This document shows positions 10,855 through 51,623 of a stretch of DNA of 64,000 nucleotides, piece after piece (position 1 is the stretch's first letter; each line of letters opens with the position of its first letter). A program made the translations under genes and the position numbers. The stretch lies in sequence record NC_023688.1; one strand, 5' to 3'. Under the pieces are notes generated by a model, which was not told where the DNA came from, made no database searches, and saw only the letters and a list, made by a program, of their open reading frames with translations.

Positions 10855-11469
10855 TCAGAGCCCTGCGGGGCTCTTTTCGTATGAGCTACAAATTTCGCAT
10901 CTGGTATTACTCTTGATGCGAGTCAACGATAGATCAAAAGAGCCATGTTGTTTGCAAGTCACTTGGTATTGTGTGCTGTTACCAGCCCAGCCAGAAACTT
11001 GTTTGACTGCATAGCCGTTTGATTTAGCATAATCGGAAACGATCTTAACTGCAAGATGCTTCGGCTTTTTCTTTTCGATGCCGATACAGACATCACATTT
11101 TGGTTGATCGAACATCACTTTACCAACTTTTGTAAATGTAGTGTGACCGTGCTCGCACTGCAAAGCTATCTGACTCTCGCGGTGCCACTCCTCCTTAATC
11201 GAAGGCGCTGTAAATAGTGTGAACTTAGTCTTGCTCAAGTTTTGCATCACAAGCTTCTGGCGCTGTTTGTCGTTGAAGTGATACTTGCGATCACACCAGC
11301 AACGCATACGACTGATATCTTGGAACTTAGCGGGAAATACTGGCAGACCCAGACCTTTTCGCTTAGTGCATTTATCACAGACACAAGCATACACCTTGTT
11401 ACCACTGGTGTCAATACCATAAATGTCAATAATAGTGAATTGTCTAATTTTAGTACCGATTCTGTTCAT
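10855..11469 (-). CDS. Hef-like Zn-ribbon repeat protein lacking the C-terminal nuclease domain
   Basis: Multiple CxxC/CxH motifs; N-terminus homologous to ORF 46182-47171; ends at CEICSSYEKSPAGL. Confidence 0.7.
   Translation of the reverse strand: MNRIGTKIRQFTIIDIYGIDTSGNKVYACVCDKCTKRKGLGLPVFPAKFQDISRMRCWCDRKYHFNDKQRQKLVMQNLSKTKFTLFTAPSIKEEWHRESQIALQCEHGHTTFTKVGKVMFDQPKCDVCIGIEKKKPKHLAVKIVSDYAKSNGYAVKQVSGWAGNSTQYQVTCKQHGSFDLSLTRIKSNTRCEICSSYEKSPAGL
10857..10877 (+). terminator. Rho-independent terminator after gp14
   Basis: AGAGCCC-TGCG-GGGCTCT followed by TTT. Confidence 0.75.
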
Positions 11470-11590
11470 ATAGTATACTCACCTAGAAAGTCGCGTCAGC
11501 GACTGCGTAGCTAACCTATTGTAATTAAAGGAGAAGAGAAGATAGATCTTCATTAAAGATATATAAGAGAATTTATCTTCTCTTCTTCTC
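11470..11590. repeat. Dispersed ~120-bp palindrome-rich element, copy 1
   Basis: Highly similar to 51471-51590; contains AGTCGC-GTCA-GCGACT and GAAGAGAAGATA...TATCTTCTCTTC inverted repeats. Confidence 0.9.
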
Positions 11591-11623
11591 ACGATTGAGC
11601 GGCTTTGCCGCAGTGCTAAAGCA

Positions 11624-22443: not shown

Positions 22444-24051
22444 ATGTCTAAGAAATCTCTCCTGAAAAAATGGCAGCCGCTGGTAGAAAGTGAAGGTATG
22501 CCTGCTATTGCTTCTATGCAACGCAAAGATATCGTCGCTCGTATCTTCGAAAACCAAGATGAAGATATTGCACATAACGAAGGTGGTGTGTATACTGATC
22601 AGGTAGTTGTTAACTCCATGGTTGACGTTAAGGGTCGTCTGGAAGAAGCTAAAGCTCTGCAAGAAGCAAACATCGGTGGTGATCACGGTTACGATGCTAC
22701 CAAAATCGCTTCTGGCGAAATGTCTGGTTCTATCACCAACGTCGGTCCTGCTGTTATGGGTCTGGTACGTCGCGCTATTCCGCAACTGATTGCGTTTGAT
22801 ATCTGCGGTGTTCAGCCAATGACCAGCTCTACCGGTCAAGTGTTTACTCTGCGCGCCATCTACGGCGGCGACTCACAAGACGCTAACGCTCGCGAAGCTT
22901 TCCACCCAGCATTCAGCCCTGACGCTGATTTCTCTGGTCGTGGTGCTCAAGTCAAGATCGCCGAATTCGCTCGCGGTACTGCATTCGCTAACGGTGCATT
23001 TGCTCACCTGTTCATCGAAGCTGCTACTGGTGTTCAAGCTGGTACCAAGACTGTTCAGTTCATCAAGGACTATGCAATCGACGCTCTGCCTGCTGAACAA
23101 GTTGAAGCTGGTCTGGCTTACAAATGGCTGCTGGCTCAAGGCTACGCTGTAGAAACTAGCTCTGCAATGGCTACCGCTTTTGCCGAATTGCAACAAGGTT
23201 TCAACGGTTCTACCGGTAACGAGTGGAATGAAATGTCTTTCCGTATTGACAAACAAGTTGTTGAAGCTAAATCTCGTCAACTGAAAGCTCAATACTCTAT
23301 CGAAATGGCACAAGATCTTCGCGCTGTTCACGGTCTGGACGCTGATAGCGAACTGTCTAGCATTCTGGCTAACGAAATCATGCACGAAATCAACCGTGAA
23401 ATGGTTCTGTGGATTAACGCTACTGCTAAAGTAGGTAAGACTGGCTGGACCAACATGCACGGCGGCAAATCTGGTGTGTTTGACTTCCAAGACACCAAAG
23501 ACATCCGTGGCGCTCGTTGGGCTGGTGAAAGCTACAAAGCTCTGGTAGTTCAGATTGACAAAGAAGCGAACGAAATCGCTCGTCAAACTGGTCGTGGACA
23601 AGGTAACTTCATTATCTGTTCTCGTAACGTTGCCGCTGCTCTGGGTCACACCGACATGATGGTTACTCCGGCTGCTCAAGGTGCTAATACCACTATGAAT
23701 ACCGACACCACTTCAAGTCTGTTCGCTGGTGTTCTGGCTGGTAAGTATCGTGTGTATATCGACCAATACGCTGTTGAAGATTACTTCACCGTTGGTTACA
23801 AAGGTAGCTCTGAAATGGACGCTGGTCTGTTCTACTGCCCATACGTTGCTCTGACCCCACTGCGCGGTACTGATCCTAAGAACTTCCAACCAGTTCTGGG
23901 CTTCAAGACTCGTTATGGTGTTAAACTGCACCCAATGGCTGATTCTATGCAGAACAAAGGCTTTGCTAAGATCACCAACGGTATGCCGCAACACACCAAC
24001 ATGTTCGGTAAGAACGCATTCTTCCGTCGTGTTCTGGTTGCTGGTGTATAA
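22444..24051 (+). CDS. gp23: Major capsid protein gp23
   Basis: EANIGGDHGY, GLVRRAIPQLIAFDICGVQPM, AKSRQLKAQYSIEMAQDL, YCPYVAL...FKTRYG; CTAAATA at 22377-22383. Confidence 0.99.
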   Translation: MSKKSLLKKWQPLVESEGMPAIASMQRKDIVARIFENQDEDIAHNEGGVYTDQVVVNSMVDVKGRLEEAKALQEANIGGDHGYDATKIASGEMSGSITNVGPAVMGLVRRAIPQLIAFDICGVQPMTSSTGQVFTLRAIYGGDSQDANAREAFHPAFSPDADFSGRGAQVKIAEFARGTAFANGAFAHLFIEAATGVQAGTKTVQFIKDYAIDALPAEQVEAGLAYKWLLAQGYAVETSSAMATAFAELQQGFNGSTGNEWNEMSFRIDKQVVEAKSRQLKAQYSIEMAQDLRAVHGLDADSELSSILANEIMHEINREMVLWINATAKVGKTGWTNMHGGKSGVFDFQDTKDIRGARWAGESYKALVVQIDKEANEIARQTGRGQGNFIICSRNVAAALGHTDMMVTPAAQGANTTMNTDTTSSLFAGVLAGKYRVYIDQYAVEDYFTVGYKGSSEMDAGLFYCPYVALTPLRGTDPKNFQPVLGFKTRYGVKLHPMADSMQNKGFAKITNGMPQHTNMFGKNAFFRRVLVAGV

Positions 24052-44743: not shown

Positions 44744-45172
44744 TCACTTACCGCGACGAACTTTCTTCTTTTCTACCGGTGCTGTAGTTGCTGCGCCAGT
44801 CGGGCGCGGTGCATGACGCTTGAACTTGAATTCAACGCGCTGAGTTTCGGCATCGACAATGCGATTTTGCTTACCGAGAACAACGGCATCGGCGTCTTTC
44901 ACGAACTTGTATACACGTTCGGCTTTACGAACAGCGCGAGTCAGAGCGACGTCCAGACGAGAATCCTTAGCGCCTTTCTTCGGGTTAACCGGACCAGTGT
45001 AGCCCCAACGAGAAGATTTGGCGGGGATCTTGGTCAGTGCAACTTTAGCGACTTCATCAGTCGGGTTAGCGGCAACATGACGCTCGATATCGCGAGCTTT
45101 GTTCTTAGCGAACAGACCAGTTGCTTTGTAGATTGCGAAGTGACCTTTACCGCGACGAGATTTCTTAGCCAT
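44744..45172 (-). CDS. Highly basic protein at the T4 30.9 position
   Basis: K/R-rich termini; AAGGA RBS; terminator 44689-44720 downstream. Confidence 0.75.
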   Translation of the reverse strand: MAKKSRRGKGHFAIYKATGLFAKNKARDIERHVAANPTDEVAKVALTKIPAKSSRWGYTGPVNPKKGAKDSRLDVALTRAVRKAERVYKFVKDADAVVLGKQNRIVDAETQRVEFKFKRHAPRPTGAATTAPVEKKKVRRGK

Positions 45173-45332
45173 TTTGAATTTCCTTTTGTATAGATTCGAT
45201 TAGTTGTTTAACAACGTCATCACCGAATTCAGTTTCGATGTTTTCGACGTCGAATGTCCAACGAGTCGTAAGCTTTCTAGGTTTAGCTTTAACAACGACT
45301 CGTTCGACTTTAAATGTCAGTGCTTGATCAGT
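45165..45332 (-). other. 55-codon start-less frame directly after and in frame with the rIII UGA (candidate readthrough extension); gp23-like peptide
   Basis: TGA ACT GAT CAA... gives TDQALTFKVERVVVKAKPRKLTTRWTFDVENIETEFGDDVVKQLIESIQKEIQNG*; no ATG/GTG/TTG; stop overlaps next start. Confidence 0.65.
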
Positions 45333-45617
45333 TCAGGACTTGAAGTAGTCTTTCAGTTCAGCGGTGATGCCGCGAACAACAGAGCTATCCAGTTCTTTAG
45401 CGAAACGCAGACCGTAGCCTTGTTCCATGTCCCACTGATTGATATACTCAACCATTTCTACCGCTTTTTTGTTTTTCGGCAGAGCGGACGCTTGTTCCAT
45501 AGCGATTGCCAGAACGTCAATAGATGCGCCTTGGTTTTCGTGACCGGCGTTCCACGCTTGACGTTGAGCAACAACAGAACCACGAACCAGAGTTTCTACA
45601 AAGTTTTTTACAGACAT
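45333..45617 (-). CDS. rIII: Lysis-inhibition accessory protein RIII
   Basis: QRQAWNAGHENQGASIDV resembles T4 rIII QRNAWNNGHENYGASIDV; follows gp31. Confidence 0.92.
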   Translation of the reverse strand: MSVKNFVETLVRGSVVAQRQAWNAGHENQGASIDVLAIAMEQASALPKNKKAVEMVEYINQWDMEQGYGLRFAKELDSSVVRGITAELKDYFKS

Positions 45618-45626
45618 TTTATTTCC

Positions 45627-46094
45627 TTACTTGCTTAGAAGTGTCAAAGATGATTTAAACGGTACTTCACTTTCTGCGACTGGCTTGCCGGCTGGGCAAC
45701 CATCATAGATCGTGCGGATTGCTTTATAATGCATAGTCACGAAGATTCGTGCATCTGTGCTATTACGTGGGATTAACCCGTATGCCATACGCGGATCAGG
45801 TACATTACTGTAAATGCTACCGCCTTGTGGCAATGCAACGTCTTTTCCCATTAACTCTTTGACGTTATCTGGACAAGCATCACCAATCGAAACAATCGTT
45901 CCATACAAAGGAATATCGCCTTGATTTCGTACACCCAAAATCAGACCAGCGTCAGATTTTAACTCCTCACCCTTTCTCGCAGCCGAACACTCAAGAACAA
46001 CTTGTTCATCGAATGCCTTAAACCCGAGTGTTGGGTCTTGACTATAAATCGAAACACGTCTTTTTTGTTCCGATGCGTTTTCAGTTTCACTCAT
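45627..46094 (-). CDS. gp31: Capsid co-chaperonin gp31 (GroES analogue)
   Basis: FKAFDEQVVL...GEELKSDAGLILG..QGDIPLYGTIVSIG...VPDP...HYKAI. Confidence 0.92.
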   Translation of the reverse strand: MSETENASEQKRRVSIYSQDPTLGFKAFDEQVVLECSAARKGEELKSDAGLILGVRNQGDIPLYGTIVSIGDACPDNVKELMGKDVALPQGGSIYSNVPDPRMAYGLIPRNSTDARIFVTMHYKAIRTIYDGCPAGKPVAESEVPFKSSLTLLSK

Positions 46095-46181: not shown

Positions 46182-47171
46182 TCAATCTTGAACGATAGTA
46201 AACATGTTTTCGCACAATCTTACTTTTGTTTTAGAAAACATTATATCGAAGCAATCATTTAGACAATCGATGGGCAACGTCTCAGTAAATGACTTGAATG
46301 CGGTTTTGCTCACCACGCCTTTCTTACCGACGATTGAGTTTCGCATTTTATTGAATTCATTTTCGATTTCTAAAGGAAGATTTCCATCATTACAGTTCAA
46401 GTGATAGTGTGAGATCAGGTCGCACAATTTGGAAGATCTATGTTGTCTCAATCTAGAATCAAAATTGGCACAGATTCCATACTTGATGAATTTATTTTCT
46501 TCGTGTTTCCAAATCGTTATGTAGAAACAACCCGGCTTGGATTTATTGTATCCAGTATCAGCACACGCAGGACATCCATTCTTAGCGTTGATAAAATTCT
46601 CATACGCTACGTCCCATTTATATCCGCACACACAAGATAAAACAATCCTAGATCGTTTGTTCTTGTATTCTCCGCCTTCTATAGAAATAAACTTTAGATT
46701 TGATTCCTTACATCGGTCATGTATTTTACTCATGTAATCGGAACATCTATCCCGATTCGCATTATCTCTAATGCCGCACAATTTACAACCAGATTTCATA
46801 TAACCAATTAGACTATGAGTGGAAGTTTCCCATTCATATTCATCTACACAACATTTAAGGCGTATCTTTTGATCCGTATGCTCAATTGCATCATTTGAGA
46901 TTATTTTATATCGACCATTGGAAACTCTATTGATTAGGATTCTATACTGTTCGTTCGTGTATCTATGCGACTTGGCACATCCACACGGAATTTTATTCCG
47001 AATTATGTCAGACTTCAACTGTTCGAACACAGCATCACCAAATAACTCCGGATCTTGCGAGCATACGGAACACTTAACCAAATACAACTTATTTCTATGT
47101 TGTTTTCTTTCTGAAATGCCAACGACGGTTAGATTACCGTCGTTGAACTTTTGACCTATTAGTGGATCCAT
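46182..47171 (-). mobile_element. Hef-like homing endonuclease (Zn-ribbon repeats plus C-terminal GIY-YIG-like domain)
   Basis: Several CxxC; CPAC..GYNKSKPG.FYI....KYGI....SRLRQH...IENEF...TET; lies between 31.1 and 31. Confidence 0.75.
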
Positions 47172-51327: not shown

Positions 51328-51470
51328 TTTCTTCCTCTATTTGTTTGGAATAGAAAGATACCTTTTTCTATGCACTTCCTTTGTTGATTGTTGACGACGA
51401 TTTATGAGTAGTATACTCGGGTAAAATCAGATTGCAAGAAGTTTTTCGCCAAATGTTCAAGATGGTACAA

Positions 51471-51590
51471 ATAGTAAACTCTCCTAGGAAGTCGCGTCAG
51501 CGACTGCGGAGCTAACTCGTTGATATCATTAAAGAAGAGAAGATAGATCTTCATTAAAGGTATATAAGGAACTTTATCTTCTCTTCTTTT
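51471..51590. repeat. Dispersed ~120-bp palindrome-rich element, copy 2
   Basis: Near-duplicate of 11470-11590, same orientation, intergenic. Confidence 0.9.
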
Positions 51591-51623
51591 AACATTTAGC
51601 TCGCTACGCTCGCAGTCTACGAC

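What the first reader, a model, noticed from the sequence alone, without database searches (positions are those of the whole stretch)
45165..45335. Hidden capsid-mimic peptide fused behind the rIII UGA stop (candidate readthrough)
Seen: the whole rIII-to-next-gene gap is a 55-codon frame in phase with rIII (TCC TGA ACT GAT...). It has no ATG/GTG/TTG, and its TAA overlaps the next start (ATGGCTAA). It reads LTFKVERVVVKAKPRKLTTRWTFD...DVVKQLIESIQKEI, aligning with this phage's gp23 residues ~264-315 (MSFRIDKQVVEAKSRQLKAQYSIE...SELSSILANEI). rIII itself aligns full-length with T4 rIII. Known: UGA-A is a leaky stop context, and gp31 two genes upstream folds gp23. Inference: a minor RIII-extended protein bears a capsid-like segment that could decoy capsid-sensing immunity or link lysis inhibition to capsid/GroEL status.
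Basis: partly seen in the sequence, partly recalled or inferred. Interest (0 to 1): 0.75.

Follow-up and report, generated by a model that had tools for sequence, protein, structure and literature searches.

The report
Capsid-like gene remnant behind rIII stop
Behind the stop codon of the lysis-timing gene rIII of Aeromonas phage PX29 lies the start-less front half of a small phage gene copied long ago from the capsid protein; it still evolves like a translated sequence, so it may be made in trace amounts as a tail on RIII, but this is unproven.

Summary
The window is Aeromonas phage PX29. After the rIII TGA, 55 codons stay open in the rIII phase, contain no ATG/GTG/TTG, and end in a TAA that overlaps the next gene's ATG. 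Seven genomes with four distinct sequences share this layout. Three relatives without the insert end rIII with TAA.

The capsid likeness is real homology: hhalign gives 94% probability against gp23 residues 263-320, equivalent to T4 gp23 249-306. It is indirect, though. The nearest relatives are the N-terminal halves of uncharacterised small phage proteins of about 110 aa that have their own ATG and a C-terminal domain. The PX29 piece lacks both, so it is a truncated gene remnant.

The two sequence types differ mostly at third codon positions and by conservative replacements (simulation P = 0.0002). A 10-bp RNA hairpin with two compensatory pairs lies inside the stretch.

How it is translated is unresolved:
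- UGA read-through from rIII: about 0.4
- Re-start at a CTG at the family's Met position: about 0.25
- Untranslated relic plus RNA hairpin: about 0.3

The decoy and GroEL ideas are untested. Moderately interesting.

The parts
45333..45617 (-). rIII gene (94 aa), ending in TGA at 45335-45333 followed by A
   Evidence: ORF list and translation. Matches phrog_1457 'lysis inhibition accessory protein' at E 2.9e-27 over 3-89. Annotated as rIII in GU396103.
45168..45332 (-). 55-codon open frame in phase with rIII, with no ATG/GTG/TTG; its stop TAA lies at 45167-45165
   Evidence: Conserved open and in phase in four sequence variants.
45318..45320 (-). CTG (codon 5 of the frame), at or next to the position of the start Met in the homologous small-protein family
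   Evidence: In alignment A8, the Aeh1 CTG-encoded Leu aligns with the Met of P0006-P0009, and the PX29 one lies one column later. No Shine-Dalgarno sequence lies upstream.
45177..45320 (-). Capsid-derived module (codons 5-52): a strand motif (VKAKPRKLTxRWT) plus the start of an amphipathic helix (VVKQLIESIQKEI)
   Evidence: Pfam Gp23 positions 134-186. hhalign 94% against gp23 263-320. The extension-only profile finds P0002-P0006 at E 6e-5 to 4e-4 across the whole library, and three of these pass the Pfam Gp23 cut-off. The module aligns almost without gaps (one single-residue gap) to the N-terminal 53 aa of the small-protein family.
45256..45308 (-). RNA hairpin 1; main 10-bp stem arms at 45304-45295 and 45269-45260
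   Evidence: -24.2 kcal/mol, z = -5.3 in PX29; -19.2 kcal/mol, z = -3.8 in Aeh1. Across the variants, two adjacent pairs change while staying paired and one becomes a wobble pair; Ah1 breaks one pair.
45215..45249 (-). Predicted hairpin 2 (weaker, no compensatory changes)
45173..45190 (-). Translation initiation region of PX29p254 (Shine-Dalgarno AAGGA at 45185-45181). It encodes the last residues (KEIQNG) of the open frame and is older than the insert.
   Evidence: The same AAAGGAAATTnAAAATGGCT precedes the homologous gene in Cronobacter phage S13, and a close version precedes it in phiAS5; both lack the insert.
44744..45172 (-). PX29p254, a 142-aa basic protein of unknown function (downstream neighbour)
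   Evidence: phrog_18475 at E 3e-79. In Ahp1_CNU-2021, S13 and phiAS5 it follows rIII after only 11, 78 and 82 nt.
45627..46094 (-). gp31 co-chaperonin gene (upstream neighbour of rIII)
   Evidence: Annotation of GU396103.
23230..23403 (+). Segment of the phage's own gp23 (residues 263-320) that the module is homologous to; equivalent to T4 gp23 249-306
   Evidence: hhalign. Mapping to T4 gp23 chains, where PX29 residue N corresponds to T4 residue N-14. The T4 spine helix includes residues 292, 306 and 307 (PMC9546572).

Best explanation
The 165 bases are the front half of a small phage gene. That gene came to lie between rIII and PX29p254 in an ancestor of the Angelvirus/Cinqassovirus Aeromonas phages. 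Its family carries, at its N-terminus, a piece derived from the gp23-type major capsid protein: the strand that leads from the insertion domain into the P domain, plus the start of the spine helix.

The PX29 copy has lost its ATG, which is now CTG, and its whole C-terminal domain. It ends in the old ribosome-binding region of the next gene.

It is still under selection as protein in the rIII phase, and it also holds a conserved RNA hairpin.

No canonical start exists, and the frame is exactly that of rIII behind a leaky UGA-A. The most likely route is therefore that a small share of ribosomes read the UGA with Trp-tRNA, which the phage also encodes, and make an RIII isoform with a tail of about 55 residues resembling the capsid protein.

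Shown: the anatomy, the homology, the conservation, the coding-like substitution pattern and the hairpin.

Inferred: that translation occurs, and that it occurs by read-through.

Speculative: the tail's role. A strand plus a helix cannot fold alone, so it would act by docking onto whatever binds that segment of unassembled capsid protein. Candidates are the chaperonin, the capsid protein itself, or a host sensor.
For: - Anatomy and phase.
- Stop codon: TGA-A in all seven insert-bearing genomes, TAA in the three relatives without the insert.
- Frame conservation: open in four variants, with both indels multiples of three.
- Substitution pattern, PX29 versus Aeh1: 35 differences, distributed 13/4/18 over codon positions (7/2/15 in codons 10-48). 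In the KAKPRK motif there are three silent changes and no replacements. dN/dS is 0.35-0.43. In the simulation, P(BLOSUM score at least as high) = 0.0002 and P(as few amino-acid changes) = 0.014.
- Long-term maintenance: the Aeh1 block was imported from a third lineage with the same layout, so the piece has been kept in divergent lineages.
- Homology.
- No relative in 1.84 billion cluster representatives of about 15 billion proteins has a sense codon in place of the stop, or a separately called gene for this piece.
- The phage encodes tRNA-Trp(CCA). UGA read-through depends on competition between Trp-tRNA and RF2 and rises with more tRNA-Trp (PMC10570021).
Against: - There is no direct evidence of translation.
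- Read-through in bacteria is usually a percent or less.
- No suppressor tRNA was found, and the hairpin starts about 27 nt (main stem about 31 nt) after the stop, too far to act on a ribosome sitting at it.
- In all homologues the module is N-terminal with its own Met, and a CTG sits at that spot.
- The piece is truncated at both ends, like a pseudogene.
- Recent changes among PX29, Ah1 and avDM12 look neutral (about 9 replacements to 2 silent). Ah1 has hit motif residues (K15N, R24S) and broken one hairpin pair.
- Only two independent sequence types exist, so the selection test rests on one pairwise comparison.
- The AlphaFold model of the piece is of low confidence (pLDDT 50).
Confidence: 0.4

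Rival explanations
1. The piece is made as a separate micro-protein of about 51 residues. Ribosomes that finish rIII at the UGA re-start 6-12 nt downstream at the CUG that replaced the gene's original AUG. Being in phase with rIII is then a coincidence.
For: - The family's start Met aligns with the CTG-encoded Leu, exactly in Aeh1 and one residue off in PX29.
- The CTG is kept in both sequence types, although the codons around it are the most diverged part of the stretch.
- In all homologues the module is the N-terminus of a free-standing protein.
- Coding-like evolution fits this route as well as read-through.
- The hairpin begins 13-20 nt after the CUG. It could hold a ribosome over the CUG; this point is an inference.
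Against: - There is no Shine-Dalgarno sequence.
- To my knowledge, CUG is a very poor initiator in bacteria.
- This model does not explain the phase with rIII (1 in 3 by chance).
- It does not explain TGA versus TAA in the relatives without the insert (TGA is 29% of stops in the window).
- It does not explain why the length difference, which lies near the stop-to-CTG linker (placement ambiguous), is a multiple of three.
Confidence: 0.25
2. The piece is not translated. It is a dead remnant of a small gene, with start and C-terminal half lost. What selection now keeps is an intercistronic RNA hairpin (for mRNA stability, processing or attenuation between rIII and PX29p254) and the ribosome-binding region of the next gene. 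The open frame and its phase are leftovers and luck.
For: - Truncation at both ends.
- A strong hairpin with two compensatory pairs.
- Relatives without the insert also have a hairpin in this gap: terminator-like in S13 and an 8-bp stem in phiAS5.
- The last ~18 nt are the old ribosome-binding region.
- Recent changes look neutral.
- The chance of no new stop arising is 0.38 in the simulation.
- Frequent patchy recombination occurs here.
Against: - The third-position bias and the conservative replacements remain after the hairpin arms are removed (12/3/15 overall; 6/1/12 in codons 10-48).
- The simulation gives P = 0.0002.
- The hairpin loop, which is not structurally conserved, shows three silent changes and no replacements in the capsid motif.
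- The residues that are nearly invariant in the family are kept.
Confidence: 0.3

Closest known systems
Read-through protein A1 of RNA phage Qbeta (coat protein extended past a leaky UGA)
   Same: A leaky UGA sits at the end of a complete gene. An in-phase open frame without its own start follows it. A minor extended isoform would be made by near-cognate Trp-tRNA. (This comparison is from my own knowledge.)
   Different: Qbeta is an ssRNA phage, and its product is proven and essential. Here the phage is a T4-like dsDNA phage, the product is undetected, the extension is only 55 residues, and it is a truncated remnant of another gene.
gp23-type major capsid protein (Pfam PF07068), segment T4 gp23 249-306
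   Same: Homologous strand-plus-helix segment with the AK-R-L-A-W-T motif and the helix pattern.
   Different: Only about 50 of about 520 residues are present. The piece has a loop 9-11 residues shorter than in true capsid proteins, and no A domain or P-domain sheet. It cannot be a capsid protein.
Uncharacterised family of 85-114-aa small proteins in large-phage metagenomic contigs (P0002, P0004, P0006-P0013, P0016)
   Same: The same N-terminal module with the same shortened loop. Identity is 26-36% (up to 43% by local BLASTP) over about 53 residues, and the alignment is almost gap-free.
   Different: Most of those proteins (P0004 excepted) have their own ATG and a conserved C-terminal domain (GW..V... 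W.F...DA..F.L.W), and they sit in arrays of paralogous small genes. The PX29 piece has neither ATG nor C-terminal domain and sits behind rIII.
T4 RIII antiholin-accessory protein
   Same: The upstream gene is a full-length RIII homologue next to gp31, as in T4.
   Different: To my knowledge no RIII with a C-terminal extension is known, and none turned up here. Relatives without the insert stop with TAA.

Membership tests
gp23-type major capsid protein (Pfam PF07068) | Profile match above the family's curated score | tested here: not met
   17.3, 12.4, 16.3 and 17.1 bits against a cut-off of 24.4. Homology is supported only by profile-profile comparison (94%) and transitively through P0003, P0005 and P0006, which do pass the cut-off.
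gp23-type major capsid protein (Pfam PF07068) | Complete HK97-type fold (P domain, A domain, insertion domain) | tested here: not met
   Only model positions 134-186 of 376 are covered. The frame is 55 codons long.
Leaky-stop read-through extension (Qbeta A1 type) | UGA in a weak context, followed by an in-phase open frame without its own start, conserved among relatives | tested here: met
   TGA-A and an open in-phase frame in seven genomes with four variants.
Leaky-stop read-through extension (Qbeta A1 type) | Extension evolves under protein-level constraint | tested here: inconclusive
   The PX29-Aeh1 comparison is clearly coding-like (P 0.0002-0.014). Changes within the PX29/Ah1/avDM12 type look neutral. 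There are only two independent types.
Leaky-stop read-through extension (Qbeta A1 type) | Extended protein actually made | not testable with these tools
   This needs ribosome profiling, mass spectrometry or a reporter assay.
Suppressor-tRNA or recoded stop (phage code change) | A phage tRNA with anticodon UCA | tested here: not met
   ARAGORN finds 21 tRNAs in the cluster stretch scanned (record 83-98.5 kb). tRNA-Trp has anticodon CCA and none has UCA. There are no tRNAs in the window. Record 100-124 kb and 188-222 kb were not scanned.
Small capsid-piece protein family (P0006-like) | N-terminal strand-helix module with the shortened loop | tested here: met
   The extension-only profile finds P0002, P0004 and P0006 at E 6e-5 to 4e-4 against 1.84 billion proteins. 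Alignments.
Small capsid-piece protein family (P0006-like) | Own start codon and the C-terminal domain ending ...DA..F.L.W | tested here: not met
   There is no ATG/GTG/TTG. The frame ends after the first half of the helix.
Intrinsic transcription terminator | GC-rich hairpin followed by a run of U | tested here: not met
   The hairpin is present, but no U run follows it and the scan reports no terminator in the gap.
RIII lysis-inhibition accessory protein | Full-length match to the family profile and a position next to gp31 | tested here: met
   phrog_1457 at E 2.9e-27, residues 3-89 on profile positions 1-86 of 86. Gene order.

The most novel reading that the evidence does not exclude
A T4-like dsDNA phage uses leaky UGA read-through to hang a capsid-protein look-alike (the gp23 strand plus spine-helix segment, where T4 gp31-bypass mutations map) onto a fraction of the antiholin partner RIII. 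This would be one instance of a wider, unrecognised class: large phages carry small proteins built from pieces of the major capsid protein. Such proteins might act as capsid mimics that titrate chaperonin, blunt or bait capsid-sensing host defences, or poison the assembly of rival phages.
Probability: 0.15. Interest if true: 0.8.

Novelty: new variant of a known kind. Interest (0 to 1): 0.5.

Why it matters
If the tail is made, it would be a rare case of functional stop-codon read-through in a dsDNA phage. It would also be the first RIII isoform, linking a lysis-timing protein to a capsid-derived peptide encoded next to the capsid chaperonin gene.

Independently of that, the search turned up an unannotated family of small proteins in large phages whose N-termini are pieces of the major capsid protein. 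At least two different pieces occur, and they are conserved in synteny. This suggests that capsid fragments are reused as functional modules. That idea can be tested directly against capsid-sensing defence systems and capsid assembly.

If the piece is dead, it is still a clear example of how a gene remnant can be kept as an RNA hairpin.

Tried and rejected
- **More relatives.** IMG/VR scans with RIII and with the piece returned only PX29, Aeh1 and Ah1. The one metagenome scan gave only a chance coiled-coil hit, L016. IMG/VR scans with P0002 and P0006 found nothing.
- **Own gp23 or gp24 as the direct source.** BLASTP gave E = 22 against gp23 and no hit against gp24.
- **Solved structures.** A profile search of the piece found no capsid protein.
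- **Structure prediction.** gp23 folded without an alignment was useless (pLDDT 31). The piece alone reached pLDDT 50, with only a helix at residues 38-54.
- **Known RNA family.** No match in the gap.
- **Repeated mobile element (promoter-stem-loop or MITE type).** The sequence is single-copy in the window and in each phage record.
- **Promoter or terminator in the gap.** None found by the scan. By eye there is no T4-type late promoter; TATACAAA is not kept in Aeh1.
- **Suppressor tRNA.** None found.
- **Selenocysteine.** The hairpin is too far from the UGA.
- **Gene-60-type bypass** from TCC to the TCT/TCC at codon 47. This would skip the very part that shows coding constraint.
- **+1 shift into PX29p254 at GGC-TAA.** No plausible re-pairing.
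- **Opposite-strand gene.** Those frames carry stops in most genomes.
- **Names for the small-protein family.** None on record.
- **The count of structure pairs** was not run, because it would have needed a long typed structure string.

Full report
**Identity and anatomy**

The window is Aeromonas phage PX29 (GU396103). Window position = record position minus 124000.

All genes discussed here lie on the minus strand:
- gp31: 46094-45627
- rIII: 45617-45333, 94 aa
- PX29p254: 45172-44744, a 142-aa basic protein of unknown function

rIII ends in TCC TGA A. The 55 codons from 45332 to 45168 are open in the rIII phase and contain no ATG, GTG or TTG. They stop at a TAA (45167-45165) inside ATGGCTAA, the start of PX29p254.

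**Is it more than chance?**

I defined 84 putative genes in the window. Their stop codons are TAA 54, TGA 24 and TAG 6; eight end in TGA-A.

Thirteen genes have an in-phase open stretch of at least 55 codons after the stop. In twelve of them that stretch is simply the next gene, with a canonical start. rIII is the only one without a start.

The same layout occurs in PX29, AsFcp_1/2/4, Ah1, avDM12-TAAL and Aeh1, which give four distinct sequences. Both length differences are multiples of three: a codon missing in Aeh1 and a codon added at the end in Ah1 and avDM12. The other five frames carry stops in most genomes.

**The stretch is a clade-specific insert**

The homologous downstream gene follows rIII closely in other phages:
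- after 11 nt in Aeromonas phage Ahp1_CNU-2021
- after 78 nt in Cronobacter phage S13
- after 82 nt of unrelated sequence in phiAS5

In all three, rIII ends in TAA. In all insert-bearing genomes it ends in TGA-A.

The last ~18 nt of the open frame (AAAGGAAATTnAAAATGGCT) are the old ribosome-binding region of the downstream gene. S13 has the same sequence. The residues KEIQNG are therefore encoded by that region, not by the insert.

**The capsid likeness is real but indirect**

Direct BLASTP against the phage's own gp23 (22444-24051) is not significant (E = 22), and nothing is found against gp24. Other evidence supports homology:
- Pfam Gp23 (PF07068, positions 134-186 of 376) is the top hit for three of the four variants and second for Aeh1. 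E is 0.003-0.1, below the gathering score.
- The PHROG major head protein family is the top hit for all four variants.
- tblastn against 50,697 phage records finds, beyond the close relatives, only the major capsid proteins of Atu_ph07 (E 0.006) and pf16 (E 0.1).
- A profile of the four variants against an alignment of five gp23/gp24 proteins gives 94% probability, E 1.3e-7. It pairs residues 4-52 with PX29 gp23 263-320, with a 9-residue gap.

PX29 gp23 residue N corresponds to T4 gp23 residue N-14, so the segment is T4 gp23 249-306. [quoted passage not shown] That paper also reports that G292S/V306I/V307I removes the need for gp31 (PMC9546572). I checked that the T4 chain has G, V and V at those positions.

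The piece therefore corresponds to the strand coming back from the insertion domain plus the first half of the spine helix.

**The nearest relatives are small proteins, not capsid proteins**

A profile made only from the extension was run against 1.84 billion cluster representatives. It found six proteins at E <= 0.001.

Three of them (P0003, P0005, P0006) pass the Pfam Gp23 cut-off at the same model positions. This closes the homology chain.

P0002, P0004 and P0006 are complete small proteins that begin with Met a few residues before the strand motif. A second search recovered a coherent family of 85-114-aa proteins, P0007-P0017 and others. Their layout is:
- the strand-helix module
- ...ILQEEID(K/W)EIM...
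- a C-terminal domain ending ...W.F...DA..F.L.W

These proteins and the PX29 piece share a loop 9-11 residues shorter than in true capsid proteins. The piece aligns almost without gaps (one single-residue gap) to their first ~53 residues.

The PX29 piece lacks the family's Met and the whole C-terminal domain. It is therefore the truncated front half of such a gene. The family Met aligns with the CTG-encoded Leu of the piece, exactly in Aeh1 and one residue off in PX29.

**Signs of translation**

PX29 and Aeh1 differ at 35 of 162 aligned bases. By codon position the counts are 13/4/18, and 7/2/15 in codons 10-48. Without the five differences in the hairpin arms the counts are 12/3/15 and 6/1/12.

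In the motif KAKPRK there are three silent changes and no replacements. dN/dS is 0.35-0.43, against 0.10-0.17 for rIII and 0.17-0.27 for PX29p254.

I ran 20,000 simulations that placed the same base changes at random. The results:
- as few amino-acid changes as observed: P = 0.014
- as high a BLOSUM score as observed: P = 0.0002
- no new stop codon: P = 0.38

Against this, the roughly 11 changes among PX29, Ah1 and avDM12 are about 9 replacements to 2 silent, which looks neutral. Ah1 has changed motif residues K15N and R24S. The test therefore rests on a single deep comparison.

**Mosaic history**

Aeh1 and Ah1 are 93-100% identical across gp31, rIII and the 3' part of PX29p254. They are only 65-80% identical from about 45375 to 45020. 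PX29 and Ah1 are 90-93% identical in the piece, against about 80% in the flanks.

The piece together with the start of the next gene has therefore been exchanged between lineages that all had this layout. This means it has been kept in lineages more divergent than those sampled.

**An RNA element as well**

A hairpin spans 45308-45256. Its 10-bp stem arms lie at 45304-45295 and 45269-45260.
- PX29: -24.2 kcal/mol, z = -5.3
- Aeh1: -19.2 kcal/mol, z = -3.8
- Ah1: -16.2 kcal/mol, z = -1.7

Between PX29 and Aeh1, two adjacent pairs changed on both sides and stayed paired, and one became a wobble pair. Ah1 breaks one pair.

S13 and phiAS5 also have a hairpin in this gap. Some RNA function between rIII and the next gene seems to be general, and it explains part of the conservation.

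No Rfam family, promoter or terminator was found in the gap.

**Route of translation**

The frame is the rIII frame and is closed by the TGA. Ribosomes can therefore enter it only by reading through the stop or by starting at a non-canonical codon.

For read-through:
- The phase with rIII.
- TGA-A here versus TAA in the relatives without the insert.
- Indels in multiples of three.
- A phage tRNA-Trp(CCA). Read-through of UGA is a competition between Trp-tRNA and RF2 and rises when tRNA-Trp is raised (PMC10570021).

Against read-through:
- No suppressor tRNA.
- No nearby stimulator.
- Low expected yield.

For a CUG re-start:
- The CTG lies at the ancestral Met position.
- It is kept in both types within the most diverged part of the stretch.

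Against a CUG re-start:
- No Shine-Dalgarno sequence.
- CUG is a poor initiator.

My weights are read-through 0.4, CUG re-start 0.25, and untranslated relic plus hairpin 0.3.

**Function**

Nothing here tests the decoy or GroEL ideas.

The piece is predicted to be mostly disordered, with one helix (pLDDT 50). That fits a fragment that needs a partner.

Two points are suggestive only: the equivalent gp23 helix carries the T4 gp31-bypass mutations, and the piece lies next to gp31-rIII.

**Verdict**

The feature is a conserved, truncated, capsid-derived gene remnant behind a leaky stop, with moderate evidence that it is still translated and no evidence yet for what it does.

Noticed in passing
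L018 1436-1831 and 2287-2619; L019 1813-2139 and 5001-5336; L024 9210-9545 and 10001-10330; L025 2014-2349 and 2805-3134: Metagenomic large-phage contigs carry arrays of paralogous small genes (60-130 aa) that share a C-terminal motif (...DA..F.L.W). In each contig two members carry different pieces of the gp23-type capsid protein at their N-terminus. One piece is the N-terminal 'IIPLIRR..P.IIA.DIVGVQPM' motif. The other is the strand plus spine-helix segment. The pair is conserved in synteny. No Pfam or PHROG family covers the C-terminal domain, and no source names these proteins.
   Followed up: partly
window 46182-47171 (-): A 329-aa ORF lies between gene 31.1 and gp31. RefSeq labels it 'endonuclease'. 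It is present in PX29 but absent from AsFcp_1/2/4, Ah1 and Aeh1, whose matches stop just upstream of gp31. It is probably a mobile homing-endonuclease gene.
   Followed up: partly
window 45975-46094 (-): The first ~60-90 bases of PX29 gp31 are unrelated to those of Aeh1 and Ah1 (13-30% identity). The PX29 gene is longer (468 versus 411 nt). This may be a consequence of the neighbouring insertion.
   Followed up: no
window 45020-45435: A recombination hot spot. Over about 400 nt, identity between PX29 and Aeh1 swings from 100% to 70% to 95% to 60%. Aeh1 and Ah1, near-identical on both sides, drop to 65-80% here.
   Followed up: partly
window 11464-11592 and 51465-51593: A 129-nt direct repeat with 83% identity, 40 kb apart.
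   Followed up: no
L015 34087-34161 and 44799-44873 (record GU396103 84087-84161 and 94799-94873): Two tRNAs annotated 'tRNA-OTHER' in GenBank are read by ARAGORN as tRNA-Ala(CGC) and a second tRNA-Met(CAT). Neither is a suppressor.
   Followed up: yes
L013 1393-1470 and L004 2432-2513: The rIII-to-next-gene gaps of Cronobacter phage S13 and Aeromonas phage phiAS5 each hold a stable hairpin. The S13 hairpin is followed by AUUUU. An intercistronic stem-loop at this position therefore seems general in these phages.
   Followed up: partly
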